A stretch of DNA of 53,743 nt. Origin: Octopus sinensis. Its lineage: Eukaryota. Below are positions 2,340-53,743 of this stretch, one piece after another. The DNA lies in NCBI RefSeq assembly GCF_006345805.1, contig NW_021833880.1, positions 1-53,743 on the forward strand, written 5' to 3'. The notes beneath the pieces are model-generated. The model was not told the origin of the DNA and ran no database searches. It saw only the letters and a list, made by a program, of their open reading frames with translations. Made by a program: the position numbers and the translations under genes. The number at the start of each line of letters is the position of its first letter. Position 1 is the first letter of the stretch.

Positions 2340-2810
2340 ACTTAGATATGTTCGACCAAAGATTGGTCCAGGCCATGTCTAACTTAATAGCACCACCTGA
2401 TAGGATTATCTAAATCCTGTTTAAGTCAAGTTTTGTTTATGGTCCATTCAAGTAGTGAGTTTTTGTTGGGTGAGTTGTATCCAATTATGGGTGGCTTATC
2501 TGGTATTCCTTGAAGGAATCTATCCAGACTCCGTTTAAAGTTGGTGGGATCCTTTTCCTGTTTGATCTCTTTCGGGACAATGTTAAATAGGGCAGGGCCT
2601 GTTGAGGAAAAGAAATTATGTTGCAGTGTACATGTATGCTGTACATGTATGCTGTGATCTTGAATTGGGCAGGTCCCAGTCTTGGATGAACCTTGAAGCT
2701 AGTGTTCAGGTCGTTTGGGCAAAGTTGCCGGTATATTCTCCACATCGTACAAATTAGGTACCGTTCACGGCGATGCTGGAGAGAGTAGAGTTTCAAAGCT
2801 TTAAGGCGGA
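2340..2810 (-). mobile_element. CR1-clade LINE, 5'-truncated 3' end
   Basis: Minus strand translates [23 protein letters not shown]...GPALFNIVPKEIKQEKDPTNFKRSLDRFLQGIPDKPP. 3' tail GGTGCT..CATGGCC-hairpin-(TCTAAGTTT)n is similar to the tail at 25490-25560. Confidence 0.85.
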
Positions 2811-7904: not shown

Positions 7905-8528
7905 CATTCTTTTCTACTCTAGGCACAAGTTCCGAAATTTTGGGGGAGGGAGCCAATCGATTCGATCGACCCCAGTATGCAACTGGTACTTAATTCATCG
8001 GCCATGAAAGGATGAAAGGCAAAGTCGACCTCGGCGGAACTTGAACTCAGAACAGTAAAGAGAGACGGAATACCACTAAGCATTTCACCCGGCGTGCTAA
8101 CGTTTCTTATTTCTTTTTTTTTTTATTGCCCACAAAGGGCTAAACACCGAGGGAAGAAACAAGGACAGACAGACGGATTAAGTCGATTATATCGACCCCA
8201 GTGCGTAACTGGTGCTTATTTAATCGACCCTGAAAGGATGAAAGGCAAAGTTGACCTCGGCGGAATTTGAACTCAGAACGTAGCGGCAGACGAAATACCT
8301 ATTTCTTTACTACCCACAAGGAGCTAAACACAGAGAGGACAAACAAGGACAAACAGATTAAGTCAATTATATCGGCCCAAGTGCGCAACTGGTACTTATT
8401 TAATCGGCCCCGAAAGGATGAAAGGCAAAGTCGACCTCGGCAGAATTTGAACTCAGAACGTAGCGGCAGACGAAATACCGCTAAGCATTTCGCCCGGCGT
8501 GCTAACGTTTCTGCCAGCTCGCTGCCTT
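7905..8528 (-). mobile_element. Family A tRNA-derived SINEs, including a head-to-tail dimer
   Basis: Reverse complement of GGCGGCGAGCTGGCAGAAACGTTAGC...GAGTTCAAATTCCGCCGAGGTCGACTTTGCCTTTCATCCTTTCGGGGTCGAT. The central block resembles, from memory, the Meta-type SINE domain. Confidence 0.9.
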
Positions 8529-10842: not shown

Positions 10843-11274
10843 ATTAGTGTATGAACGCATGAATATATACATACGTACTACATACACACCACACACACAC
10901 ACCCACACACACACACACACACCATATATAATATATATATATATATATATAATATATGTAGGTCCCGGGTTGAGTCGGGTTAACCACAGTAAATAAGGTA
11001 CTCAATACATAGCAGAGTAAATTAATTTATTATATAGAAGGAGCTTCTACAGGACTAGAACTGTTTCATTCAAAAGCTTCTGATGATTTCTTTTGAATGA
11101 AACAGTTCTAGTCCTGTAGAAGCTCCTTCTATATATATATAAAACAGTACTGGGAGAATAACAACGGAACGAAGCGAACGAATCGAATCGAATTCTGTTG
11201 TAAAAAAATAGTTTTCCCGTTTTCGTTTCTCATTGAGTTCTACGTCTATTTGTGGTGTCCTGTATTCACGTATA
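10671..11274. repeat. Nested foldback of PLE-derived sequence
   Basis: Outer arms 10671-10801 / 11145-11274 are near-perfect inverted repeats. Inner arms 11031-11076 / 11090-11135 form a perfect 46-bp inverted repeat with a 13-nt loop. Confidence 0.9.
11075..11124 (+). ncRNA. Type I hammerhead, slightly degenerate
   Basis: AGCTT-CTGATGA-TTTC-TTTT-GAAT-GAAAC-AG-TTCTAGTC-CT-GTA-GAAGCT. It appears to lack one C at the stem I/core junction. Confidence 0.6.
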
Positions 11275-12195: not shown

Positions 12196-12590
12196 GAGGG
12201 CGGCGAGCTGGCAGAAACGTTAGCAACGCCGGCCGAAATGCGTAGCGGTATTTCGTCTGCCGTTACGTTCTGAGTTCAAATTCCGCCGAGGTCGACTTTG
12301 CTTTTCATCCTTTCGGGGTCGATTAGATAAGTACCAGTTACGCACTGGGGTCGATATAACCGACTTAATCCGTTTGTCTGTCCTTGTTTGTCCCCTCTAT
12401 GTTTAGCTCCTTGTGGGTAATAAAGAAATAGGTATTTCGTCTGTCTTTACCTTCTGAGTTCAAATTCCGCCTAGGTCTACTTTACCTTTCGGGGTCGATA
12501 AATTAAGTACCAGTTGCGCACTAGAGGTGATCTAATCGACTGACCTTTTCTCCCAAAATTTCGGGCCTTGTTCCTAGAGTAGAACCGATT
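12196..12590 (+). mobile_element. Family A SINE dimer
   Basis: Full unit followed by a 5'-truncated unit joined at AAAGAAATA|GGTATTTCGTCTG. Confidence 0.9.
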
Positions 12591-16717: not shown

Positions 16718-17115
16718 TTTCTACTCTAGGCACACAAGGACCGAAATTTTGGGGGATGGAACCAGTCGATTGGATCGACCCCAGTACGCATCTGGTACTT
16801 AAGTTATCGTCTCCGAAAGGATGAAAGGCAAAGACGACCTCGGCGGAATTTGAACTCAGAACGTAAAGACAGACGAAATACCTATTTCTTTACTACCCAC
16901 AAGGGGCTAAACACAGAGAGGACAAACAATGACAGACAAACGGATTAAGTCGTTTAGATCGACCCCAGTGCGTAACTGGTACTTATTTAATCGACCCCCG
17001 AAAGGATGAAAGGCAAAGTCGACCTCGGCGGAATTTGAACTCAGAACGTAACGGCAGGCGAAATACCGCTAAGCATTTCGCCCGGCGTGCTAACGTTTCT
17101 GCCAGCTCGCCGACT
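16718..17115 (-). mobile_element. Family A SINE dimer
   Basis: Same family; the same junction occurs near 16880 on the reverse strand. Confidence 0.9.
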
Positions 17116-20707: not shown

Positions 20708-20902
20708 CTGTTTTAAAAAATAAAATGGTTTTTTTTTGGTCTATATTTGATTTTTGTTTAATATATTTTTCAGATTTTAAACATGTATTTGTGCATGTTT
20801 CACCCCCTCTCTCGCTCTTTCTATCTCTTTGTGTCTGTCTGTCTGTCTTTTTCTGTGCTTGTCTCTCTGCATGTGTTTATAAGAAACGGGTAAATTGAGT
20901 GG

Positions 20903-21300
20903 CAGGGCGGTGAGCTGGCAGAATCGTTAGCACGCCGGGCGAAATGCTTAGCGGTATTTCGTCTGCCGCTACGTTCTGAGTTCAAATTCCGCCGAGGTCG
21001 ACTTTGCCTTTCATTCTTTCGGGGTCGATTAAATAAGTACCAGTTACGCACTGAGGTCGATATCATCGACTTAATCCGCTTGTCTGTCCTTATTTGTCCT
21101 CTCTGTGCTTAGCCCCTTGTGGGTAGTAAAGAAATAGGTTTTTCGTCTGTCTTTTTGTTCTGAGTTCAAATTCCGCCGAGGTCGACTTTGCCTTTCATCC
21201 TTTCGGGGTCGATAAATTAGGTTCCAGTTGCGTACTGGGGTCAATCAATCGACTGGCCCCCTCCCCAAAAATTTCGGGCTTTGTGCCTTGAGTAGAAAAG
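20903..21300 (+). mobile_element. Family A SINE dimer
   Basis: Junction GTAAAGAAATA|GGTTTTTCGTCTG near 21135. Confidence 0.9.
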
Positions 21301-21469
21301 AAAGAGGTAGAATGAGTGCGCGCTTGTGTGTGTATGTATGAAACAGAGAAAGGGAGGAAAGGAGAGGAGCTTGAAGGTGAAGGTGAGAGGGAGTGAGAGA
21401 GAGAGAGAGAGAGAGGAGAAAGAGAGGGTGTAATTGAAAGAGGTAGTAAGAGAACGAGAAAGTGCAAAG

Positions 21470-22960
21470 TTTTCGACCTCATAAGAGCATTAAGCGTAGA
21501 AGTTTTCAAGCAATTTCGATTCTTAATTTTGACATTGTGGAAAACAGAGAAAATTCTTTCTGACGTTGCAGAGGAATGTGGTAAAGAAAGAAGACTGAGC
21601 ATAAAAGATGACAAGAGAAATGTGGTGATGATCACCACATTTCTCTTGTGAAACAGCAAACCCAAATTTTTCTGACTCGTTATACGGGATGAAAGGACAA
21701 TCTTGAACCGTCCAGTCGTGCCATTCCAGAATAATTTCTTCGAAATCTTTTTCATCACAAAGACTGGGGAATCGCATAATAAGTGGTATAATTGACCTTA
21801 GCCTTCCTTCAGTTACGTTGGTTGGTTCCAACGCCTCTAGTAATCCCAAATTGTTCTGCATATCGCAAGACTAAAACCGTACAAGGATTTGATATGAAAG
21901 ACTATCAAAGAATCGTAGTATATTCTGTCGGAGTCCCCAATTCATCAGGGGCAATGGTGATAGCATTTTCGTATAAAATTCTCTCAGCTACAGCCCCAAA
22001 GTAGATACAGTTTAATGGTTGGTGTGTCGTTGCATCGTTGAGATTAATCTCACACATATTGATGACAGATTTGATGAAATTGCTCAAAATTCCCTTCATT
22101 CCAGCGTTGATGGCTCTTTTAAGCTTATGCATCCGATATGCTTCGGCCTGGAATTCCAGATTAAGTTTGTTAACGTCGTTTAAAATGAAATAGAGAAATG
22201 GTAAATACATCTTTGTAAGAGGATTCTTCATTTCAGTGAGGATTCATCGAGCCGTAATTGGACACCCACCTTCTAATGTTGCATGTGTGAAATATGGCAG
22301 CAGTGTTGGCCACTGCTCTGAAATGCGCTGCACAACTTGCTTGAGATACAGTCATCTAGTGCAACTTGCATGCAGGATTTTGTGAGGATCAACTGAAGTT
22401 ATTTTCTGCAGATCTTTGAATTCATTGATACGCTCAGGATTGTGACTGAAGTATGCATAAATACTTCTTGTCATGTCTTCGACAGAATTCGGTAATTCCT
22501 TGCACGCGTTTGGTGAACATACGTGTAAAGAATGATAAACACAGGCTTGAACACAAAGATCTGGCCTGTTCTGCTTCAACACAGGCGAAACCTATCAAAT
22601 TTTCCAGAGGAATAGTGTGCTCGTTTAAAAGTGATAGAAGACAGTTGTATATACCCATAGCACTGCAATCTTGTATTTCTATAAATGTAAGAAAATCGTC
22701 GACTGTCATAATATCTGGAAACCAGGACAGGTTGTTTTAGTGTTGAAACATCAGTTGTTTCATCAATAACGAAAGAGAATTTTGTTGAATGATGTTTTGT
22801 TTTTAATAAAGCGTTGAATCTGTAGGGGCCAATGGCTTTAAGAAAGATGTATGTGCCTATCGTTCGGGCACACTTTGCATCCTTGTCGGTTATTTTTGAC
22901 AAAGCTGTGGGGAAGGCAGATCTTCCAGGAGAAAGATAATCTTAAATAAAACTTGCAGTC
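21470..22960 (-). pseudogene. hAT-superfamily transposase relic, frameshifted
   Basis: Successive frames give KCARTIG..FSFVIDETTDVST..; C-x2-H-like CVYHSLHVC; TKMYLPFLYFILNDVNKLNLEFQ; and the C-terminal dimerisation motif LSLPHSSATSERIFSVFHNVKIKNRNCL. Confidence 0.9.
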
Positions 22961-23130
22961 AGAAATAGTTACCAGTCATCTTGCTGTGCTTGTCACTGGA
23001 ACCTACTATAGCAACACAGAGTGTGGCAAAAGTGTTGTCTAAGCTTTAGTCACTGAGATCCAGTGACGTACATATGTCTTTCTATCGCTTCATTTCTTGA
23101 TCTGTTTTGAATTTTATTAAGTCCTTTGGC

Positions 23131-23354
23131 GATGGATGCGTGGCGATGGATGCGTGGCGATGGGTGCGTGGCGATGGATGCGTGGCGATGGGTGCGTGGC
23201 GATGGATGCGTGGCGATGGGTGCGTGGCGATGGATGCGTGGCGATGGGTGCGTGGCGATGGATGCGTGGCGATGGATGCGTGGCGATGGGTGCGTGGCGA
23301 TGGATGCGTGGCGATGGATGCGTGGCGATGGGTGCGTGGCGATGGATGCGTGGC
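23131..23354 (+). repeat. 14-bp minisatellite, 16 copies of GATGG(A/G)TGCGTGGC
   Basis: Counted directly; only position 6 varies. Confidence 0.95.
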
Positions 23355-23722
23355 GATGTGCAATGTCATATCCTCGCACATTCAAGGATGAAAGTAAATG
23401 AGAACAACTGGGCCGAATGTGAGATGCTATCAACTGTCAGGATGAAGCAATGGTAATATAGCATCTACATGCATAAATGTTTACAAAGAAATGTCCAAGT
23501 GGTCAGGACGTTGAGCTCACGATCATTTGGTTGTGGGTTCGACTCCTTGGCGAAGGGAGTTTCCTTCACGCTGTTCCAGTTTGCTCTTCTGAAAATGAGT
23601 ATCAGCTGTCGCATAGCGGTGATGTACTGGGCCACGAATAAGAAAGACGAGAAGGTGTCTGTGGTTGTTCATGAATAGATAGGCACCGAAAACAATTTTT
23701 GAAACTACGGTAGATGATGCAA

Positions 23723-24112
23723 AGTGGAGGCGCAATGGCCCAGTGGTTAGGGCAGCGGACTCGCGGTCGTAGGATCGCGGTTTCGATTCCCAGACGGGCG
23801 TTGTGAGTTGTGGTGTTTATTGAGCGAAAACACCTCTAAAAGCTCCACGAGGCTCCGGCAGGGGATGGTGGTGATCCCTGCTGTACTCTTTCACCACAAA
23901 TTTCTCTCACTCTTATTTCCTGTTTCTGTTGTACCTGTATTTCAAAGGGCCGGCCTTGTCACTCTCTGTGTCACGCTGAATATCCCCGAGAACTACGTTA
24001 AGGGTATACGTGTCTGTGGAGTGCTCAGCCACTTACACGTTAATTTCACGAGCAGGCTGTTCCGTTGATTCGGATCAACCGGAACCCTCGTCGTCGTAAC
24101 CGACGGAGTGCT
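23723..24112 (+). mobile_element. tRNA-Arg-like SINE, full length (family C)
   Basis: GTGGAGGCGCAATGGCCCAGTGGTTAGGGCAGCGGACTCGCGG...GTTTCGATTCCC. Other copies at 44612-44770(-), 46880-47050(+) and 53218-53600(-). Confidence 0.9.
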
Positions 24113-25489: not shown

Positions 25490-27520
25490 TACAACTTAGA
25501 TTGGTTCCGGCCATTATCGACCCAGGCCATGCGTAACTTAATAGCACCACCTGGAAATGTCTTTTAATTAATTATTTTGGGACACCATGGACCACTCAAG
25601 CAGGAAGTTGTTGGATGAAACGTATCCAAGAGTAGGTGGTTTGTCTGGCATTTCTTGGAGGAATTTGTCCAGGTTCCATTTGAAGGTTGAGGGGTCTTTT
25701 TCTACTTCAATTTCTTTCGAGATAACATTGAAAAGTGTAGGACTATTTGCAGTAGAGAAGTTGTGTTGCAATGTTCTTATGTGATGTGATCTCGACCTTT
25801 GTAGTAGCTTTCCACCGACTCCAACGTTGGATAATTTCCCTAACACTATATTGTGGTCAACTCTATCAAAGGCCTTGCTGAAATCAAGGTATATGACATC
25901 GGCGTTGGAGCCCTCGCTTAGTGCATTTAAGATGCCATTAAAGTGGTGGAGGAGCTGTGTTAGACAGTCCCTCCCACCGCGAAAGCATGCTGGTTGCAAT
26001 TTAGAAGATGATTTTGCACTAGGAAGGCTGTTATTCTTGATCTCAACACTCTCTCAATATTTTGATATGTAAGGTGAGTGAAATTGGACAGTAGTTTACT
26101 GGGAGCGATTTATTCCCATTTTTGAAAAATAGGAACAACTGACTGAGAGAGGTGGTTTTGAGAGGTAAAACCATCCTCTAGTGATTTCCTCCAGAGATTT
26201 GCAAGAGGAGCTGCAAGTTGCTGTCTGCATTCCTTCAGCACTGTAGCAGGGAACCTGTCAGGACCCACTGTTGAATCAAGTTTGATTTCTTTTATTGCCT
26301 CTAGGATGTCAGTAGCGTCGAAGATTATGTCGGAAAGGACATGCTGAGGATTCAAAGAAGCATGTTGCTTGAGTCAGCTGAATCAGGGTCACTGAAAACA
26401 GAGCAGTATCGACTTTTCAGAATCTCGGCCATGTCTTTGGCATCACTGTGAAAGATGCCGTTTCCGTCAAGCAGTGGGCCGATAGAGGAAACTGTGGCCC
26501 TATGTGGTTTTGCAAAGGAGTAAAAAACCTTAGGAATATTCTTGATGTTTTTAATAGTCCTTGCTTCCTCTGCAGCTCTTTGGTCGTTTATCGGAGTTCT
26601 CATACACTCCTGCAACTGTTTCTTCTTTGATTCCAAGGTTGTTGATGTTCTCGATTGGGAGGATGCTGCTGACGGTGGTATTTTAGAGTATTGATTTTTC
26701 GGTTTATTCTTTTTATTCTCCTGTTGAGCGCTTTTCTCTGTTTTGGAATCCTGCATCTACTGTTATTTATGAGCCATGAGGGTGTGTGTTTTGAGCATAT
26801 GTTGGTAGCTGTGTCTTCAAATAGTTGCCATGCGTTTGTGCTTGTTGTGATATTGGAGGAAGCAATGGTGAAGGACCAGTCCATTTGCGATAAGTCTTGA
26901 GTGATCGCGCTCCAGTTTGACTTTTGTAAATTCATATTATCAAATGGGTGCACTGGAGTCAGTGATTTATGCCAAATTTTTGAATGCGGAAGACTGAGGT
27001 TACAGAGTACTATGCCATGATCGGACAGGAATGTTCTTTCCACTGTGATGTTATGGATAGTTTTAGCATGATTGCTTATCACTAGATCCAAGACACTTTC
27101 ATTGTTTCTGGTTTGCTCATGAACGAGTTGTGACAGGGAAAAAATTATCAATAAATCTGGAAAGTAACTCTACTGTTGCTTTGTCTGAGTTTGAGGTGAA
27201 GGTTCTTGGTCTAACAATATTAGTGGACCAGTCTACAGAGGGTAGGTTGAAGTCGCTCATCATCAGAATATTTCCTGGTTTACATTGCAGGAGGAAAGAT
27301 TTGATCTTCTTGAGGCACTCTTCGAAATAGTGTAAGGGTGCTTCTTGGGGTCTGTAGAACCAAATGACAGAGAGGTCTTTACCCTTGTTGTATACAGAGA
27401 CGCATTCGCCGTAACCGCTGGAGAAAATTACCTTGGCATCTGCGCTGAAAGAATCAGGGAGGAAACCAGCAACTCCCATCTTTCTTCAGCTTGGCCGATC
27501 AGCCTCTGAAGTCTCTGATT
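25490..27520 (-). mobile_element. CR1-clade LINE ORF2 relic: endonuclease plus partial RT, internally deleted
   Basis: APE motifs FYRP, SDFNLP, VLDLV and LSDH; RT motifs VGPDRF..VLKEC, QHAFRGGRDCLTQLL and VIYLDFSKAFDRVDH. After KLLQ it jumps to the C-terminus, so the QG and YADD-type motifs are missing. 3' tail at 25490-25560. Confidence 0.92.
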
Positions 27521-27640: not shown

Positions 27641-28166
27641 CATACATAACGCGCACACACATGCAGACATACACACAGACACACACACATGTAGTAATAC
27701 ACATCATATAATGTTATTTATTGTAATTTGAGTTTCACATTGCCGAATCGCTTCTGTAACAATATTTAGGAATAAGACATTCTCAGGAGGTCTTATTCCA
27801 AAAGAATAAAGAGGAATAACACCTCTGCAGAAAAATCCCTGCACTGTCTGTCTGTCTGCATGTAAGTGTATACACACATACACACACATGCACATATCTA
27901 CTAGCGTCACCTTGTCACTCGTACACACGACAAATAAGTTTAGCTTGCTTAAACACATTTTAAAGCGGTAATGAAGGAAACTCAATATATACGAAACTAT
28001 ATATACTTTCATATACATTCATATGCTACAACAGACTGATTTCATCTTTATTTATAAAAAAAAAAATCTGCTCAATATTTGTTGTGATTATCCGCTAAGC
28101 TGATACAGTCTTCACATGGGATCAAAACATACCAGAAACTAAACTGTTAGACAAACTAAACTGTTA

Positions 28167-28767
28167 AAGGCGGCGAGCTGGCAGAAATGCCAGCACGGCG
28201 GGCGAAATGCTTAGCCGGATTTCGTCTGCCGTTACGTTCTGAGTTCGAATTCCGCCGAGGTCGACTTTGCCTTACATCCTTTCGGGGTCGATAAATTAAG
28301 TACCAGTTACGCACTGGGGTCGATGTAATCGACTTAATCCGTCTGTCTGTCCTTGTTTGTCCTCTCTGTGTTTAGCCCCTTGTGGGTAATAAAGAAATAG
28401 GTATTTCGTCTGCCGTTACGTTCTGAGTTCAAATTCCGCCGAGGTCGACTTTGCCTTTCATCCTTTCGGGGTCGATTAATTAAGTACCAGTTACGCACTG
28501 TGGTCGATGTAATCGACTTAATCCGTCTGTCTGTCCTTGTTTGTCCTCTCTGTGTTTAACCCCTTGTGGGTAGTAAAAAAATAGGTATTTCGTCTGCCGT
28601 TACGTTCTGAGTTCAAATTCCGCAGAGGTCGACTTTGCCTTTCATCCTTTCAGGGTCGATTAATTAAGTACCAGTTGCGCACTGGGTCGATGTAATCGAC
28701 TGAATCCCTTTGTCTGTCCTTGTGTGTCCCCTTTATGTTTAACCCCTATGAGCAATAAAGAAATAAG
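28167..28767 (+). mobile_element. Family A SINE trimer flanked by a single 14-bp TSD
   Basis: TSD AAACTAAACTGTTA at 28153-28166 and 28768-28781; internal units start at 28400 and 28584. Confidence 0.92.
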
Positions 28768-31899: not shown

Positions 31900-31917
31900 T
31901 GATAGATAGATAGATAG

Positions 31918-32144
31918 GCGGCGAGCTGGCAGAAACGTTAGCACACCGGGCGAAACGCTTAGCGGTATTGCGTCTGTCGTTGCGTTCTGAGTTCAAATTC
32001 CGCCGAGGTCTACTTTGCCTTTCATCCTTTCGGGGTCGATAAATTAAGTACCAGTTACGCACTGGGGTCGATGTAATCGACTTAATCCGTTTGTCTGTCC
32101 TTGTTTGTCCCCTCTATGTTTAGCCCCTTGTGGGCAATAAAGAA
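31918..32144 (+). mobile_element. Family A SINE monomer within (GATA)n
   Basis: Full head to tail. Confidence 0.9.
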
Positions 32145-32667: not shown

Positions 32668-33062
32668 TGTTTCAGTCATGTGAGTGTAGCCATGTTGGAG
32701 CACCGCCTTTAGTCGAGCAAATCGACCCCAGGACTTATTCTTTGTAAGCCTAGTACTTATTCTATCGGTCTCTTTTGCCGAATTGCTAAGTTACGGGGAC
32801 GTAAACACACCAGCATCGGTTGTCAAGCGATGTTGGGAGGACAAACACAGATACACAAACATATACACATACATACACACACATATCTATATACATACAT
32901 ACGACGGGCTTCTTTCAGTTTCCGTCTACCAAATCCACTCACAAGGCTTTGGTCGGCCAAAGGCTATAGTAGTAGACACTTGCCCAAGGTACCACGCAAT
33001 GGGACTGAACCCGGAACCATGTGATTCGTAAGCAAGCTACTTACCCCACAGCCACTCCTAAG
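32668..33062 (-). mobile_element. CORE-type SINE (family B)
   Basis: Reverse complement of 6775-7175. Confidence 0.9.
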
Positions 33063-33149: not shown

Positions 33150-33700
33150 ATGTGGGCACTATAAAAGAGCATTGCAAAGTGACATGGACAGCTGCCGCAG
33201 AGACCACGAAGCCGTGGCCAGCAGAAAAGGACACAGTAAGCGTTCTGACTGCGTCCGCATGCCAGTTTTCATCCAACGACTTTGAACAGGGGATTAAGCC
33301 CAATTGGGACGGCTATATAAAGCTGCTGGGGACTGTGGTCAAATCCTGGTTGGAGAGGGTTGCTTCTGGATGGCCACATGTATGGCAGCAGGATTCGGCT
33401 CCTTGCCATACTTCCGAAAAGAGTCAGCGGTGGTTGTCGGAGAATTTCTACGACTTCACTAACCCCTATTTATAGCCTTCTGATTTTTCCGGATTGTAAT
33501 CTTATGGGTTACTATATGTGGGGCGCGGTTGAGAAAGACATCAACCACTCTACCTGCAACACCAAGGCCGAACTGGTGGCCAAGATCAAGAATGTGTTCG
33601 AAGACCTTCCCAAGGATACGGTGAAGAACGCATGTGCAATATTCCGGAGCCGTCTTGAGGTCGTGGTGGTGGTGATGGGGAAGTTACTTAGAGTAAACTG
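33150..33700 (+). pseudogene. Tc1/mariner transposase relic
   Basis: HEAVASRKGHSKRSDCVR, then VWQQDSAPCHTSEKSQRWLSENF..., YYMWGAVEKDINHSTCNTKAELVAKIK..ACAIFRSRLEVVV. A possible left TIR (TA-CAGGGAGTTCGG) lies at ~32505. Confidence 0.88.
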
Positions 33701-33823
33701 TTTTACTATATAAAGATCACCAACTGCCTACCCGGAGTAATTTCTGACGGCACGTGCCTGATATATATATATATATATAATATATATATATATATATTAT
33801 ATATATAGATATATATATAATAT

Positions 33824-34859: not shown

Positions 34860-35068
34860 TCTTTTATTCTTTACTCTTTTACTCTTTTACCTGTTTCAGT
34901 CATTTGACTGCGGCCATGCTGGAGCACCTCCTTTAGTCGAGAAAATCGACCCCAGGACTTATTCTTTGTAAGCCCAGTACTTATTCTATCGGTCTCTTTT
35001 GCCGAACCGCTAAGTGACGGGGACGTAAACACACCAGCATCGGTTGTCAATCAATGCTAGGGGGACAA

Positions 35069-35099
<31 letters not shown>

Positions 35100-35262
35100 C
35101 ATATATACGACAGGCTTCTTTCAGTTTCCGTCTACCAAATCCACTCACAAGGCATTGGTCGGCCCGGGGCTATAGCAGAAGACACTTGCCCAAGATGCCA
35201 CGCAGTGGGACTGAACCCAGAACCATGTGGTTGGTAAGCAAGCTACTTACCACACAGCCACT
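34860..35262 (-). mobile_element. CORE-type SINE (family B), full length
   Basis: Reverse complement of 6775-7175. Confidence 0.9.
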
Positions 35263-35470
35263 CCTGCACACAATTATATAAATATATAATCTTTCGCTGA
35301 GGCATTGCGCGACTAATAACCTCGGGTGGAACTCAATATCCATGCTTCAGAATGAAGAATTAGTCGAATACAGAGGATGGAATGACAAAGGAATAAGCGA
35401 TTATCGCATGAACTTCCTAAACTTAAAGCTGTTTATGCTATAACAAGCAGTGGACTTGCAATTCAGTGCC

Positions 35471-35565
35471 TGAGAAACGGCGTTTAGCTTCATCGGGGCC
35501 TCGAATATGAAATGCAATTTCTATTCGAGGCTCTGATGAACCTGTAAGTTGTTACTTAAGCCCTC
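35471..35565 (+). ncRNA. Candidate pri-miRNA hairpin (predicted pre-miRNA 35485-35546)
   Basis: TTCATCGGGGCCTCGAATA pairs fully with TATTCGAGGCTCTGATGAA, and the lower stem extends to 35471/35558. UG lies at -14 and CNNC at +16 relative to one consistent Drosha cut. Confidence 0.65.
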
Positions 35566-35996
35566 AACTATGAAACCACTGCATTTATAGCAGAAACAGC
35601 TACATGCTGGTGAATTTGATAAGATAATCATTTTGTATATATTTACATATATATACACAAACACATACACACACACACACATACACATATATATATAATA
35701 TATATACATATATATACATATATATATGTATATATATATATACACATATATACATATATATACATATATATATATACATATATATACAATAGATACATAT
35801 ATATAAATACATATATATATATACATATATATACATATATATATACTATTATACACACACATATAGAATATATTCATATATATACATACAATATATGCAT
35901 ATTACATATATATACATATATACATATATATATACATATATATATACATATATATACACACACATATATATATATACATATAATATATATATACAC

Positions 35997-39057: not shown

Positions 39058-39394
39058 CTGATTTAGAAACTTCGAGAGAACGTGAAATAATCCTCTTTGG
39101 TGATGGTGGTGGAGTCTCGAAACAGATAAAGATATAAATAATAACGTGCAAATATTGAGTTAGAAAACCGTTCAGATGGAAAAAAATATGGAAGGCTGCC
39201 CCATCAAACATAAATTCTGCTCATAATTTGCTTAAATTGCTTGCATATTTCCCTCATATTTGGTTACTTCGATACTAAGAAGACGAAGGAGGAGGAGGAG
39301 GAGGAGGCGGTGTAGTAGTAGTAGCTGTTGTAGTAGTAAAAGAAGTAGTAGGAGAAGGAGAGGCAGCAGAGTAGTAGTAATAGTAAAAGTAGTA

Positions 39395-39477
39395 TTTTAA
39401 AATAGTAGATAGTACTAGTGGTAGTAGTAGTAGTAGTAATAGTAAAAGCAGTGGAAGTAGTAGAATATTAGTAGATT

Positions 39478-39520
<43 letters not shown>

Positions 39521-39764
39521 ACGAGGGAGAAGAAGAATCAGCAGCAGTAGTAGTAGTAGTAGTAGTAGCAGCAGTAGCAGTAGTTGTAGTAGTAGTAGCA
39601 GCAGAAGTAGTAGTAGTAGTAGTAGTAGCAGCAGAGTAGTAGTAGTAGTAGTAGTAGCAGCAGAAAGTAGTAGCAGTAGTAGTAGTAGTAGCAGCAGCAG
39701 AAGTAGTAGTAGTAGTAGTAGTAGCAGCAGCAGAAGTAGTAGTAGTAGTAGTAGTAGCAGCAGC

Positions 39765-39796
<32 letters not shown>

Positions 39797-39888
39797 CAGC
39801 AGCAGTAGCAGTAGTAGTAGTAGTAGCAGCAGAAGTAGTAGTAGTAGTAGTAGTAGTAGTCGCAGCAGCAGCAGTAGTAGTAGTAGCA

Positions 39889-39923
<35 letters not shown>

Positions 39924-39979
39924 ATAGTAGTAGTAGCAGAAGAAGTAGTAGTAGTAGTAGTAGTAGCAGCAGCAGAAGT

Positions 39980-44392: not shown

Positions 44393-45107
44393 ATATTATA
44401 TATATATACGACACTGACATATATCTAATATATCTATATATACACATCCACTTGTATATATTCATATGTGCGCTTGTGTGTTCCGTATGGGTGCGTATAA
44501 AGTATAAATGCCGATATACTTATACTACATATATATATATATATTTTTTTTTTTCTGTACTTGTTTCAGTCATTTGACTGCGGCCATGCTGGAGCCCCAC
44601 CGCCTTTTAGAGTGGTGAAAGAGTACAGCAGGGATCACCACCTCTGCCGGAGCCTCGTGGAGCTTTTAGTGTTTTTTCGCTCAATAAACACACACAACGC
44701 CCGGTCTGGGAATCGAAACCGCGATCCTCCGACCGCAGTCCGCTGCCCTAACCACTAGGCCATTGCGCCTCCTATATCATATTTATATATGATATATGAA
44801 TATTACTATCGTTTACATGTATGTATGTATATATATATGTGTCGATAAATAGAAAGATCTGTCTCTCTGTGAAAGTATGTATGAACGTATGTGTGCGTTC
44901 GTGTGTTTTTTGTGTGTGTGTGTGCGTGTGTGTATGTATGCGTGTGTTCGCGTGAATTCATACATTTACTTAAATATACGTATATTTTATTACAAGTCGG
45001 CATACAAGGGCAAATAAACATTTATAAGTTCATAAATGGATATTTATATGTATACAAAAGAAAAAGAATAGAATAAACACAATAACAACATTGATAATAA
45101 TGATAAC

Positions 45108-50994: not shown

Positions 50995-51395
50995 GGTCAA
51001 ATTTTGCCACAAGGGCAACCATTTTGGGGGAGGTGGGGATGTGTCGATTATATCGACCTGCAGTACACAACTGATACTTAATTTATCGACCCCGAAGGGG
51101 AGAAAGGAAAAGTTGACCTCGGCGGAATTGGAACTCAGAAGTAGCGACGGACGAAATACCTATTTCTTTACTATCCACAAGGGGCTAAACACAGAGGGGA
51201 CGAACAAGGACAGACAAAGGGATTAAGTCGATTATATCGACCCCAGTGCGTAACTGGTACTTGATTTATCGACCACGAAATGATGAAAGGCAAAGTCGAC
51301 CTCGGCGGAATTTGAACTCAGAACGTAACGGCAGACGAAATACGGCTACGCATTTCGCCCGGCGTGCTAACGTTTCTACCAGCTCGCCGCCTTAT

Positions 51396-53039: not shown

Positions 53040-53743
53040 GGGTAAAGAGCCCCTTCGGTCAAGAACGACGATGGGATTGCACCGAGAAAGTTGTTTATGG
53101 AAAGACCAGTAGTCAGCCATGCGTACTTGCCTTCCCTCTCCACGCTATCGATGTTATTTATCCACGGGAAAGGCAAAGGCCAATACAGCTTGGCACTAGG
53201 GGTCGCAATCCATTTCTTTGGAAGCACTCCGTCGGTTACGACGACGAGGGTTCCGGTTGATCCGAATCAACGGAACAGCCTGCTCGTGAAATTAACGTGT
53301 AAGTGGCTGAGCACTCCACAGACACGTGTACCCTTAACGTAGTTCTCGGGGATATTCAGCGTGACCCAGAGAGTGACAAGGCCGGCCCTTTGAAATACAG
53401 GTACAACAGAAACAGAAGTAAGAGTGAGAAAGTTGTGGTGAAAGAGTACAGCAGGGATCACCACCATCCCCTGCCGGAGCCTCGTGGAGCTTTAGGTGTT
53501 TTCGCTCAATAAACACTCACAATGCCCGGTCTGGGAATCGAAACCGCGATCCTATGACCGCGAGTCCGCTGCCCTAACCACTGGGCCATTGCGCCTCCAC
53601 TAATCCATTTCTACAACTGAGTGAACTGGAGCAATGTGAAAATAAAGTGTCTTGCTCAAGAACACAATACACATCTAGGTCCGGGAATCGAACTTGCTAC
53701 CTCATGCTTGTGAGTTCGATGCTCTAACAACTGGATGGCAATA
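53040..53743 (-). mobile_element. tRNA-derived SINE (family D) interrupted by a family C SINE (53218-53601)
   Basis: 11-bp TSD AATCCATTTCT at 53207-53217 and 53602-53612. The host head (reverse complement of GGGAATCGAAC..CTAAC) lies at the window end. Confidence 0.85.

What the first reader, a model, noticed from the sequence alone, without database searches (positions are those of the whole stretch)
35471..35565. Candidate unannotated microRNA gene with both Microprocessor motifs in register
The upper stem has 19 consecutive pairs (two G:U) plus 5 more after a 1-nt bulge, and the lower stem continues to 35471/35558 with few mismatches. A 5' cut at 35485 and 3' end at 35546 give a 62-nt pre-miRNA with a 2-nt 3' overhang, UG at -14/-13 and CNNC (CCTC) at +16, the established positions. 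The G:U pairs favour the plus strand. Predicted arms are ~UAGCUUCAUCGGGGCCUCGAAU (5p) and ~UAUUCGAGGCUCUGAUGAACCUGUA (3p); I do not recognise either seed. Coleoids are known to have many lineage-specific neural miRNAs. It lies in unique sequence, antisense to an intron of the speculative transcript.
Basis: partly seen in the sequence, partly recalled or inferred. Interest (0 to 1): 0.8.

Follow-up and report, generated by a model that had tools for sequence, protein, structure and literature searches.

The report
MicroRNA-like hairpin inside a longer foldback
The hairpin is real and shaped like a microRNA precursor, but it is the core of a 230-base decaying inverted repeat in repeat-rich DNA, and nothing available here shows that it makes a microRNA.

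Summary
Window 35471-35558 (+) folds into an unbranched hairpin (-44.8 kcal/mol, z -7.7).

1. The hairpin is the centre of a ~230-nt imperfect inverted repeat, 35399-35628 (-91.6 kcal/mol, z -9.2). Its outer arms are complementary well beyond chance.
2. DNA-level divergence between the arms is about the same in the core and the outer arms, so nothing points to purifying selection on the core.
3. "Unique sequence" is shown only for this 54-kb window, which cannot exclude a dispersed repeat family.

The hairpin meets the structural criteria for a miRNA precursor. It has three of six known processing motifs, U at positions 1 and 9 of the 5p arm, and a weaker 5p 5' end. It matches no Rfam family.

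I could not test expression, Drosha/Dicer read signatures, genome copy number or cross-species conservation, because no cephalopod genome or small-RNA data are reachable with these tools.

Published base rates suggest roughly 0.3% of suitable hairpins become miRNA genes. I therefore put a genuine miRNA at about 0.15. A neutrally decaying foldback is the most likely reading.

The parts
35399..35628 (+). Whole imperfect inverted repeat (foldback), about 115 nt per arm, centred near 35514/35515
   Evidence: Region 35390-35635 folds as one unbranched hairpin: -91.6 kcal/mol, z -9.19, 0 of 200 shuffles as good. Self blastn finds an inverted match 35399-35629 at 69% over 232 nt, E 7e-20.
35399..35470 (+). 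Left outer arm of the foldback
   Evidence: Aligned to the reverse complement of 35559-35634 it scores 24, against a shuffle mean of -5.8 (sd 4.2); 0 of 1000 shuffles reach it. Cofold is -45.7 against -28.8 (sd 3.5).
35559..35628 (+). Right outer arm of the foldback
   Evidence: Same test as the left outer arm. Perfect blocks include GAUUAUC/GAUAAUC, AGCUGUUU/AAACAGCU, GCUAUAA/UUAUAGC and GCAGUGG/CCACUGC.
35454..35464 (+). 5' side of an 11x11-nt internal loop below the core hairpin; it could act as the single-stranded basal flank
   Evidence: Unpaired in the minimum-free-energy structures.
35565..35575 (+). 3' side of the same 11x11-nt internal loop
   Evidence: Unpaired in the minimum-free-energy structures.
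35471..35558 (+).
   Evidence: -44.8 kcal/mol, z -7.68. It keeps the same structure when folded in longer context.
35471..35472 (+). Basal UG at -14/-13 from the proposed 5' cut
35485..35506 (+). Predicted 5p arm and likely guide, UAGCUUCAUCGGGGCCUCGAAU
   Evidence: 21 of 22 nt are paired. U at positions 1 and 9. G:U wobble at position 11. The 5' end is less stable than the 3p 5' end (+0.8 against -4.7 kcal/mol). This is a prediction with no read support.
35507..35524 (+). Predicted inter-arm loop region (18 nt), which contains a weak 5-bp AU-rich apical mini-stem and a 3-nt tip
   Evidence: There is no apical UGUG motif.
35525..35546 (+). Predicted 3p arm that fits 2-nt overhangs at both ends, UCGAGGCUCUGAUGAACCUGUA
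Evidence: Derived from the pair table.
35562..35565 (+). CNNC (CCUC) starting at +16 from the proposed 3' cut
   Evidence: In the minimum-free-energy fold, 35563-64 pair weakly with 35465-66.

Best explanation
The locus is an old, single-locus inverted duplication (foldback) of about 115 nt per arm, lying in repeat-rich non-coding DNA. It sits between a SINE copy and a TA/CA microsatellite, and its two arms have since drifted apart by about 30%.

When the plus strand is transcribed, the whole region folds into a long imperfect hairpin. The central 88 nt happen to keep miRNA-like geometry because all six transition differences there are G:U-compatible on that strand.

The most likely origin is a replication template switch or another local inverted duplication. 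This is inferred, not shown.

The most likely present state is that the locus has no dedicated small-RNA function. If transcribed it would be a generic double-stranded RNA and ADAR substrate, and at most raw material for a future miRNA.

Shown here: the foldback, its extent, its statistics and its motif content. Inferred: the origin, the neutrality and the lack of processing.
For: - The inverted repeat extends to 35399-35628, and the outer arms alone are significantly complementary.
- Arm-to-arm differences are spread evenly: 12 of 44 columns in the core against 26 of 76 in the outer arms (Fisher p 0.54). The upper stem has 4 of 23 against 34 of 97 elsewhere (p 0.14). This is the pattern expected from neutral decay.
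- Foldbacks arise readily in this genome. A perfect ~48-bp-arm palindrome lies at 11031-11135 in the same window.
- The base rate is low. In primates, more than 6,000 suitable template-switch hairpins yielded 18 miRNA genes, about 0.3% (PMC10710096).
- The reference study annotated only 164 miRNA genes in Octopus vulgaris (PMC9699675).
- There is no Rfam family match at gathering score anywhere in the window. Only generic hairpin-level scores were found (mir-580, 25.7 bits against a cut-off of 83).
- Three of six processing motifs are absent: CmR, bulged GWG and apical UGUG (motif definitions from PMC11701709).
- The duplex is more perfectly paired than typical, 21 of 22 against 19 +/- 1.6.
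Against: - UG and CNNC both in register have only a 0.7-3.3% chance.
- The stem spans 35 positions, from -13 to +22. The predicted pre-miRNA is 62 nt, with 22-nt arms and an 18-nt loop. All are within MirGeneDB ranges for molluscs.
- U at 5p positions 1 and 9, a wobble at position 11 and a weak 5p 5' end are all features of real mature arms.
- All six transitions in the core are G:U on the plus strand, while the outer arms show 2 G:U against 5 A.C (Fisher p 0.021). This could reflect selection for plus-strand RNA pairing. However, choosing the locus because it folds well biases this count.
- No target-site duplication or second copy was seen. That fits a local origin but does not prove neutrality.
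Confidence: 0.55

Rival explanations
1. It is a genuine, lineage-specific canonical miRNA gene on the plus strand. The Microprocessor would cut before 35485 and after 35546, guided by the basal UG, the CNNC and a ~35-position stem, with the 11-nt internal loops acting as the basal single-stranded flanks. Dicer would then release a duplex of 35485-35506 (5p) and 35525-35546 (3p). The 5p arm (seed AGCUUCA) would load into Argonaute as the guide. The outer arms would be the decaying remains of the inverted duplication that gave birth to the gene.
For: - Hairpin stability and strand asymmetry.
- Both motifs in register, with a null of 0.7-3.3%.
- Arm, loop and pre-miRNA lengths, U1/U9, the mid-arm wobble and the end-stability asymmetry all fit MirGeneDB propensities.
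- The 6:0 G:U bias in the core against 2:5 outside.
- The authors of the octopus miRNA survey state that their count is an underestimate (PMC9699675).
- De novo birth of miRNAs from inverted copies is documented (PMC10710096).
Against: - No expression, processing or conservation evidence could be obtained.
- The prior is about 0.3% per suitable hairpin.
- The core is no more conserved between arms than the outer arms at the DNA level.
- Extended pairing below the stem blurs the basal junction, and the CNNC is partly paired.
- CmR, GWG and UGUG are absent.
- The proposed cut sites lie at the edge of a 3x3 internal loop.
- None of the 12 possible 8-mer seed sites appears among the Ovu miRNA seed sites in the held parts of Data S2/S3 of PMC9699675. 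This is weak evidence because those files are truncated.
Confidence: 0.15
2. It is one aged copy of a dispersed foldback or MITE-type repeat family. The hairpin would then simply be the palindromic structure of the element, as with human Made1 elements. Any small RNAs from it would be repeat-derived.
For: - The whole 230-nt unit is an inverted repeat, in the size range typical of MITEs.
- The surroundings are dense in transposon remains: a SINE at 34874-35267, hAT and LINE remnants.
- A family of 10,000 copies in a genome of a few gigabases would be expected only about 0.2 times in a 54-kb window. The single copy seen here therefore does not argue against a family (inference).
- There is precedent in Made1 and mir-548 (PMC1784062).
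Against: - There is no second copy or fragment in the window, even with word size 7 and E up to 10.
- No target-site duplication is visible at either plausible boundary.
- A translated-frame search found nothing, but that database holds almost nothing from this organism, so this is uninformative.
Confidence: 0.2
3. It is a hairpin-RNA or endo-siRNA locus, or another structured RNA element such as a regulated ADAR target, in which the whole long duplex rather than a 22-nt duplex is the functional unit.
For: - A long ~81-bp imperfect duplex forms on the plus strand.
- Hairpins in octopus introns and 3'UTRs are reported to be the main A-to-I editing substrates (PMC9699675).
Against: - Molluscs, including O. 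bimaculoides, lack dedicated siRNA Argonaute and Dicer proteins and show no endo-siRNA signal (PMC12479628).
- No Rfam family matches.
- Nothing suggests function beyond the fact that it folds.
Confidence: 0.05

Closest known systems
Canonical bilaterian miRNA genes, in particular the lineage-specific 'Novel' families of Octopus in MirGeneDB (PMC9699675, PMC11701709)
   Same: - An unbranched hairpin with a stem of about 35 positions.
- A 62-nt predicted precursor with 22-nt arms.
- Basal UG and CNNC in register, U at positions 1 and 9, and a mid-arm wobble.
   Different: - There is no read evidence and no known ortholog.
- Pairing extends about 70 nt beyond each side of the stem.
- The CmR, bulged GWG and UGUG motifs are lacking.
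- The duplex is more perfectly paired than average.
- It matches no Rfam family.
De novo miRNA hairpins created by replication template switching (Monttinen et al. 2023, PMC10710096)
   Same: A local inverted copy creates a ready-made stem in non-coding DNA. Most such hairpins never become genes.
   Different: Template-switch events are usually short and start out perfect. Here the repeat is about 115 nt per arm and already about 30% diverged. No outgroup sequence is available to infer the event.
MITE-derived miRNA genes such as hsa-mir-548 from Made1 (PMC1784062)
   Same: The hairpin is the fold of a short palindromic DNA unit lying among transposon remains.
   Different: Made1 is an 80-bp multi-copy element with TA target-site duplications. 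Here no second copy and no duplication were seen, and copy number in the genome is untested.
Young plant MIR genes and Drosophila hpRNAs born from inverted duplications (from my own knowledge, not checked here)
   Same: A long foldback whose outer parts decay while the central part stays paired.
   Different: Those depend on Dicer-like or siRNA pathways. The dedicated siRNA pathway is reported absent in molluscs (PMC12479628).

Membership tests
Canonical animal miRNA gene (MirGeneDB criteria) | Imperfect hairpin with at least about 16 paired nucleotides between the two arms | tested here: met
   21 of 22 nt of the 5p arm are paired. Hairpin z-score is -7.68.
Canonical animal miRNA gene (MirGeneDB criteria) | Arms of 20-27 nt, loop of at least 8 nt, pre-miRNA under 80 nt in molluscs | tested here: met
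   The predicted geometry gives 22 + 18 + 22 = 62 nt (ranges from PMC11701709). This is a prediction from structure, not from reads.
Canonical animal miRNA gene (MirGeneDB criteria) | Reads from both arms with 2-nt 3' overhangs (the Drosha and Dicer signatures) and homogeneous 5' ends | not testable with these tools
   No small-RNA read data can be reached.
Canonical animal miRNA gene (MirGeneDB criteria) | Conservation in at least one other species (required for a family name) | not testable with these tools
   No cephalopod genome is in any searchable collection. Exact 22-mers are absent from metagenome contigs and genome contigs. The protein-space searches were empty or uninformative.
Canonical animal miRNA gene (MirGeneDB criteria) | Single-stranded flanks at the basal junction | tested here: inconclusive
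   Weak 2+2 bp continue to -20. 11-nt loops on both sides follow, and then further stems.
Canonical animal miRNA gene (MirGeneDB criteria) | Processing motifs basal UG and CNNC | tested here: met
   UG at -14/-13 and CCUC at +16. The joint null is 0.69% for a fixed register and 3.3% for any of 5 registers.
Canonical animal miRNA gene (MirGeneDB criteria) | Processing motifs CmR/mGHG, bulged GWG and apical UGUG | tested here: not met
   Position -5 is G, not C. Positions -6/+4 form a G:U wobble, not a mismatch. Positions -11/-10 are GA. The loop starts AUGAAAUG. These motifs are common in miRNAs but not obligatory.
Canonical animal miRNA gene (MirGeneDB criteria) | Mid-arm bulge, wobble or mismatch at positions 10-12; U at positions 1 and 9 of the mature arm | tested here: met
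   G35495:U35534 is at position 11. U35485 and U35493 are at positions 1 and 9.
Any described miRNA family (Rfam 15) | Covariance-model score at or above the family's gathering threshold | tested here: not met
   No hits in the whole window. The best sub-threshold match is mir-580 at 25.7 bits against a cut-off of 83.
MITE / foldback transposable element | Multiple dispersed copies | tested here: inconclusive
   There is no other copy within 53.7 kb. A window of this size has little power, and the genome cannot be searched.
MITE / foldback transposable element | Terminal inverted repeats | tested here: met
   The whole unit is an inverted repeat and includes the ends GAUUAUC/GAUAAUC.
MITE / foldback transposable element | Flanking target-site duplication | tested here: not met
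   No matching direct repeat lies next to 35395/35634 or 35399/35628. It could have decayed.
hpRNA / endo-siRNA locus | A dedicated siRNA Dicer and Argonaute pathway in the host, and phased 21-22-nt reads | not testable with these tools
   The literature reports no such pathway in molluscs (PMC12479628). No reads are available.
Template-switch-generated hairpin | An ancestral or outgroup sequence lacking the inverted copy, with a donor site adjacent | not testable with these tools
   No outgroup sequence can be reached.

The most novel reading that the evidence does not exclude
A lineage-specific cephalopod miRNA gene caught part-way through its birth from a ~230-nt inverted duplication. The central 88 nt would be held in a Microprocessor-competent shape on the plus strand, which would explain why all six transitions there are G:U-compatible. 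The outer arms would be decaying freely. This would be an animal example of the inverted-duplication route to new miRNAs, in the clade with the largest known invertebrate miRNA expansion.
Probability: 0.12. Interest if true: 0.45.

Novelty: new member of a known kind. Interest (0 to 1): 0.25.

Why it matters
If reads and orthologs confirmed it, this would add one more lineage-specific miRNA to the roughly 90 novel octopus families already described. More usefully, it would document how such genes arise, which the authors of the octopus survey say is unknown (PMC9699675).

As it stands, it is one of the many genomic hairpins that look right but are usually not processed. Its practical value is as a clearly specified locus for a five-minute read-mapping and BLAST check.

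Tried and rejected
- **Known RNA family:** rejected. Rfam at gathering threshold finds nothing in the window. E-value mode gives only generic hairpin matches, and the mir-297/mir-466-type hits fall in the adjacent TA/CA microsatellite.
- **Literal arm sequences in papers:** none found.
- **Supplements of the octopus miRNA paper:** these hold no miRNA sequences. The let-7 and miR-1 control strings are absent, so the negative means nothing.
- **Seed-site tables of that paper:** they lack all 12 candidate 8-mers, but the files are truncated.
- **Other supplements:** the MirGeneDB 3.0 paper and the mollusc small-RNA survey have no usable supplements. The preprint's 19 files also lack the let-7 control.
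- **Exact look-ups of ORFs overlapping or near the hairpin, and of transposon ORFs:** not on record.
- **Translated-frame homology search across the foldback:** no candidates. A LINE ORF from the window finds only two ~55% ENA metagenome hits. The protein collection therefore barely samples this organism, and one search is uninformative.
- **Exact 22-mers in metagenome and prokaryote genome collections:** none, as expected.
- **Identifying the organism:** a SINE string search in papers gave one irrelevant hit. ARAGORN finds no tRNA. My recollection that the 34874-35267 repeat resembles the abundant octopus SINE is unverified.
- **Finding a host-gene exon, to fetch an orthologous intron:** no convincing exon was found. 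The open frames are SINE, LINE, hAT or microsatellite translations.
- **A cluster of hairpins nearby:** rejected. Other strong folds are microsatellites, SINE heads, a perfect palindrome and one tandem-duplication hairpin.

Full report

Yes. As plus-strand RNA it folds into one unbranched hairpin of -44.8 kcal/mol. Dinucleotide shuffles average -20.0 (sd 3.2), giving z -7.68, and none of 200 shuffles does as well. The reverse complement reaches only -34.6 kcal/mol, so the G:U pairs do favour the plus strand.

A position-by-position pair table confirms each structural claim:
- 19 consecutive pairs (35489-35507 with 35522-35540), including two G:U pairs.
- Five more pairs after the bulged U35508.
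- A lower stem reaching U35471:A35558.
- UG at -14/-13 relative to a cut before 35485.
- CCUC at +16 after 35546.

Over all positions of the window on both strands, UG at -14 occurs at 6.6% and CNNC at +16 to +18 at 11.7%. Both together occur at 0.69%, or 3.3% if five registers are allowed. The hairpin and its motif register are therefore both more than chance would usually give.

**2. How unusual is it locally?**

I folded every 95-nt window of the sequence on both strands (21,460 folds). The mean was -16.3 kcal/mol (sd 8.2), and 51 windows reached -44.8 or lower. Almost all of those are TA/CA microsatellites.

The non-low-complexity rivals are:
- GC-rich heads of two abundant repeats (20896, 28156, 44671, 53496 and their many copies).
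- A perfect ~48-bp-arm palindrome at 11031-11135.
- A hairpin at 2581-2695 built from a tandem duplication.

That leaves one or two unique miRNA-shaped hairpins in 54 kb. Scaled to a multi-gigabase genome, this implies tens of thousands of such hairpins.

**3.

A self-BLAST of 35270-35630 shows that the inverted similarity runs from 35399 to 35629, at 69% over 232 nt with E 7e-20.

The outer arms on their own (35395-35470 against 35559-35634) are complementary far beyond chance. Their alignment scores 24 against a shuffle mean of -5.8 (sd 4.2), with 0 of 1000 shuffles reaching it. Their cofold energy is -45.7 against -28.8 (sd 3.5).

An 11x11-nt internal loop follows (35454-64 and 35565-75), and then further stems run out to GAUUAUC/GAUAAUC at 35399/35628. 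The object is therefore a ~230-nt degenerate inverted repeat, not an isolated 88-nt hairpin.

**4. Surroundings**

Immediately upstream lies a SINE copy at 34874-35267. Other copies lie at 7177-6776 (95% identical), 32668-33059, 31123-30744 and 46163-45702. Immediately downstream, a TA/CA microsatellite begins at about 35630.

The window also carries a hAT remnant and a LINE remnant. I found no convincing protein-coding exon.

The hairpin arms and the whole 35270-35630 segment have no second copy in the window. A 54-kb sample cannot exclude a dispersed family, though. A family of 10,000 copies in a genome of a few gigabases would be expected here only about 0.2 times (inference).

I could not verify that the window is cephalopod. 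The SINE resembles, from memory, the abundant octopus SINE, but the string search in papers found nothing relevant.

**5. Does the core look selected?**

I aligned the left arm to the reverse complement of the right arm. The result was 86 matches, 16 transversions, 13 transitions and 8 gap columns.

Differences are spread evenly. The core has 12 in 44 columns and the outer arms 26 in 76 (Fisher p 0.54). The upper stem has 4 in 23 against 34 in 97 elsewhere (p 0.14). At the DNA level, then, the core has diverged as much as the rest, which is what neutral decay of an old inverted duplication predicts.

What differs is the type of change. All six transitions inside 35471-35558 give G:U on the plus strand and none give A.C. 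The outer arms show 2 against 5 (Fisher p 0.021; binomial 6/6 p 0.031). This is the only hint of selection for plus-strand RNA pairing. It is weakened by ascertainment, because the locus was picked for folding well on one strand.

**6. Scoring against what is known of miRNA precursors**

MirGeneDB 3.0 (PMC11701709) gives these reference values:
- Arms of 20-27 nt, median 22.
- Median loop of 15-16 nt.
- Mollusc precursors under 80 nt.
- 19 +/- 1.6 paired positions per duplex.
- U enrichment at positions 1 and 9 of the mature arm.
- Six processing motifs.

Features that fit:
- The precursor is 62 nt.
- 21 of 22 positions in the duplex are paired.
- 5p positions 1 and 9 are U.
- UG and CNNC are present, and there is a G:U wobble at 5p position 11 (the mid-arm motif).
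- The 5p 5' end is much weaker than the 3p 5' end (+0.8 against -4.7 kcal/mol), which predicts 5p as the guide (seed AGCUUCA).

Features that do not fit:
- CmR is absent (-5 is G; -6/+4 is a wobble, not a mismatch).
- The bulged GWG motif is absent.
- The apical UGUG motif is absent.
- The proposed cuts lie at the edge of a 3x3 internal loop.
- The CNNC is partly engaged in weak pairing.

The structural criteria are met. The criteria that actually define a miRNA gene are read signatures and conservation, and they could not be tested.

**7. Known or novel?**

No Rfam family reaches its gathering score anywhere in the window. The best sub-threshold match to the hairpin is mir-580 at 25.7 bits against a cut-off of 83, which is a generic hairpin score.

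The arm sequences occur in no paper's main text. The octopus miRNA paper's held supplements contain no miRNA sequences at all, since the let-7 and miR-1 control strings are absent.

That paper's seed-site tables list none of the 12 possible 8-mer sites for plausible 5p and 3p registers, but those files are truncated. Other papers' supplements were absent or equally uninformative. Whether MirGeneDB already holds this locus therefore remains open.

**8. Attempts to get conservation or copy-number evidence**

All of these failed for lack of cephalopod data:
- Exact look-ups of ORFs overlapping the hairpin, and of transposon ORFs, are not on record.
- A translated-frame search across the foldback found no candidates.
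- A LINE ORF from the window has only two ~55% identical relatives, both from short contigs of ENA assemblies; the one looked up is an 852-bp contig of assembly ERZ23872291. This shows that the protein collection barely samples this organism.
- The 22-mers are absent from the metagenome and prokaryotic genome collections.

**9. Weighing the explanations**

A citable base rate comes from primates. More than 6,000 suitable hairpins generated by template switching yielded 18 miRNA genes, about 0.3% (PMC10710096). This agrees with my rough estimate of 164 annotated genes (PMC9699675) against tens of thousands of comparable hairpins.

My own rough estimates raise this as follows. The two motifs in register are worth a likelihood ratio of perhaps 5-25. 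The U1/U9, wobble and asymmetry features and the G:U pattern add a further factor of a few. Uniform arm divergence, extended basal pairing and the three missing motifs pull the other way.

I put the probabilities at:
- 0.55 for a locally arisen, neutrally decaying foldback.
- 0.20 for a copy of a dispersed foldback or MITE family. The precedent is Made1 and mir-548 (PMC1784062).
- 0.15 for a genuine miRNA.
- 0.05 for other structured-RNA roles. An hpRNA/siRNA role is disfavoured because molluscs lack a dedicated siRNA pathway (PMC12479628).

**10. Verdict**

The interpretation as a miRNA gene can be neither supported nor refuted with the data reachable here, and on priors it is the less likely reading.

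The locus is a well-defined candidate. Read mapping and a genome BLAST, both trivial with the right data, would settle it.

Noticed in passing
window 11031-11135: A perfect palindrome with ~48-bp arms, folding at -72 to -79 kcal/mol on both strands. It is unique in the window and has TA-rich flanks. It could be a very young inverted duplication, a foldback element or an assembly artefact.
   Followed up: partly
window 34874-35267, plus copies at 7177-6776, 32668-33059, 31123-30744 and 46163-45702: An abundant ~400-bp SINE-like repeat with an internal CA/TA microsatellite. One copy ends about 200 nt upstream of the hairpin. From memory it resembles the major octopus SINE; this is not verified.
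   Followed up: partly
window 20896-21010, 28156-28270, 8422-8526, 17010-17112, 51287-51391, 12197-12304, 31917-32021: A second abundant repeat with 25 or more BLAST hits in the window. Its GC-rich head folds at about -47 kcal/mol and accounts for several of the strongest non-microsatellite hairpins. Its translated frame ([31 protein letters not shown]) recurs in many ORFs.
   Followed up: partly
window 44671-44785, 53496-53610, 23726-23833: A third repeat family with a cloverleaf-like GC-rich head of about -42 kcal/mol. ARAGORN calls no tRNA anywhere in the window.
   Followed up: partly
window 21195-22902 (minus strand): A hAT transposase remnant split over several frames. The Dimer_Tnp_hAT domain matches at E 1.3e-8.
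   Followed up: partly
window 25568-27479 (minus strand): A LINE remnant with weak endonuclease and reverse-transcriptase domain hits. Its only relatives in the 5.8-billion-protein collection are two ~55% identical proteins from short contigs of ENA assemblies; the one looked up is an 852-bp contig.
   Followed up: partly
window 33152-33713 (plus strand): Two overlapping ORFs that, from memory, look like the C-terminal part of a mariner-type transposase. There is no Pfam hit at E 0.01.
   Followed up: partly
window 23127-23358: A 14-nt minisatellite, TGGCGATGGATGCG, in 16.6 copies at 94% matches and 68% GC. It folds into a periodic hairpin.
   Followed up: partly
window 39312-39950: A trinucleotide repeat of about 214 units that gives long poly-Leu and poly-Thr open frames.
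   Followed up: no
window 2581-2695 (plus strand): A unique hairpin of -43.9 kcal/mol. Its 17-bp perfect apical stem comes from a tandem copy of GUACAUGUAUGCU. It is the only other unique miRNA-shaped fold in the window.
   Followed up: no
window 35632-35750: Sub-threshold Rfam matches to mir-297, mir-466, mir-3149 and mir-1277 (30-34 bits against cut-offs of 81-100). They are caused by the TA/CA microsatellite and are not miRNA evidence.
   Followed up: yes
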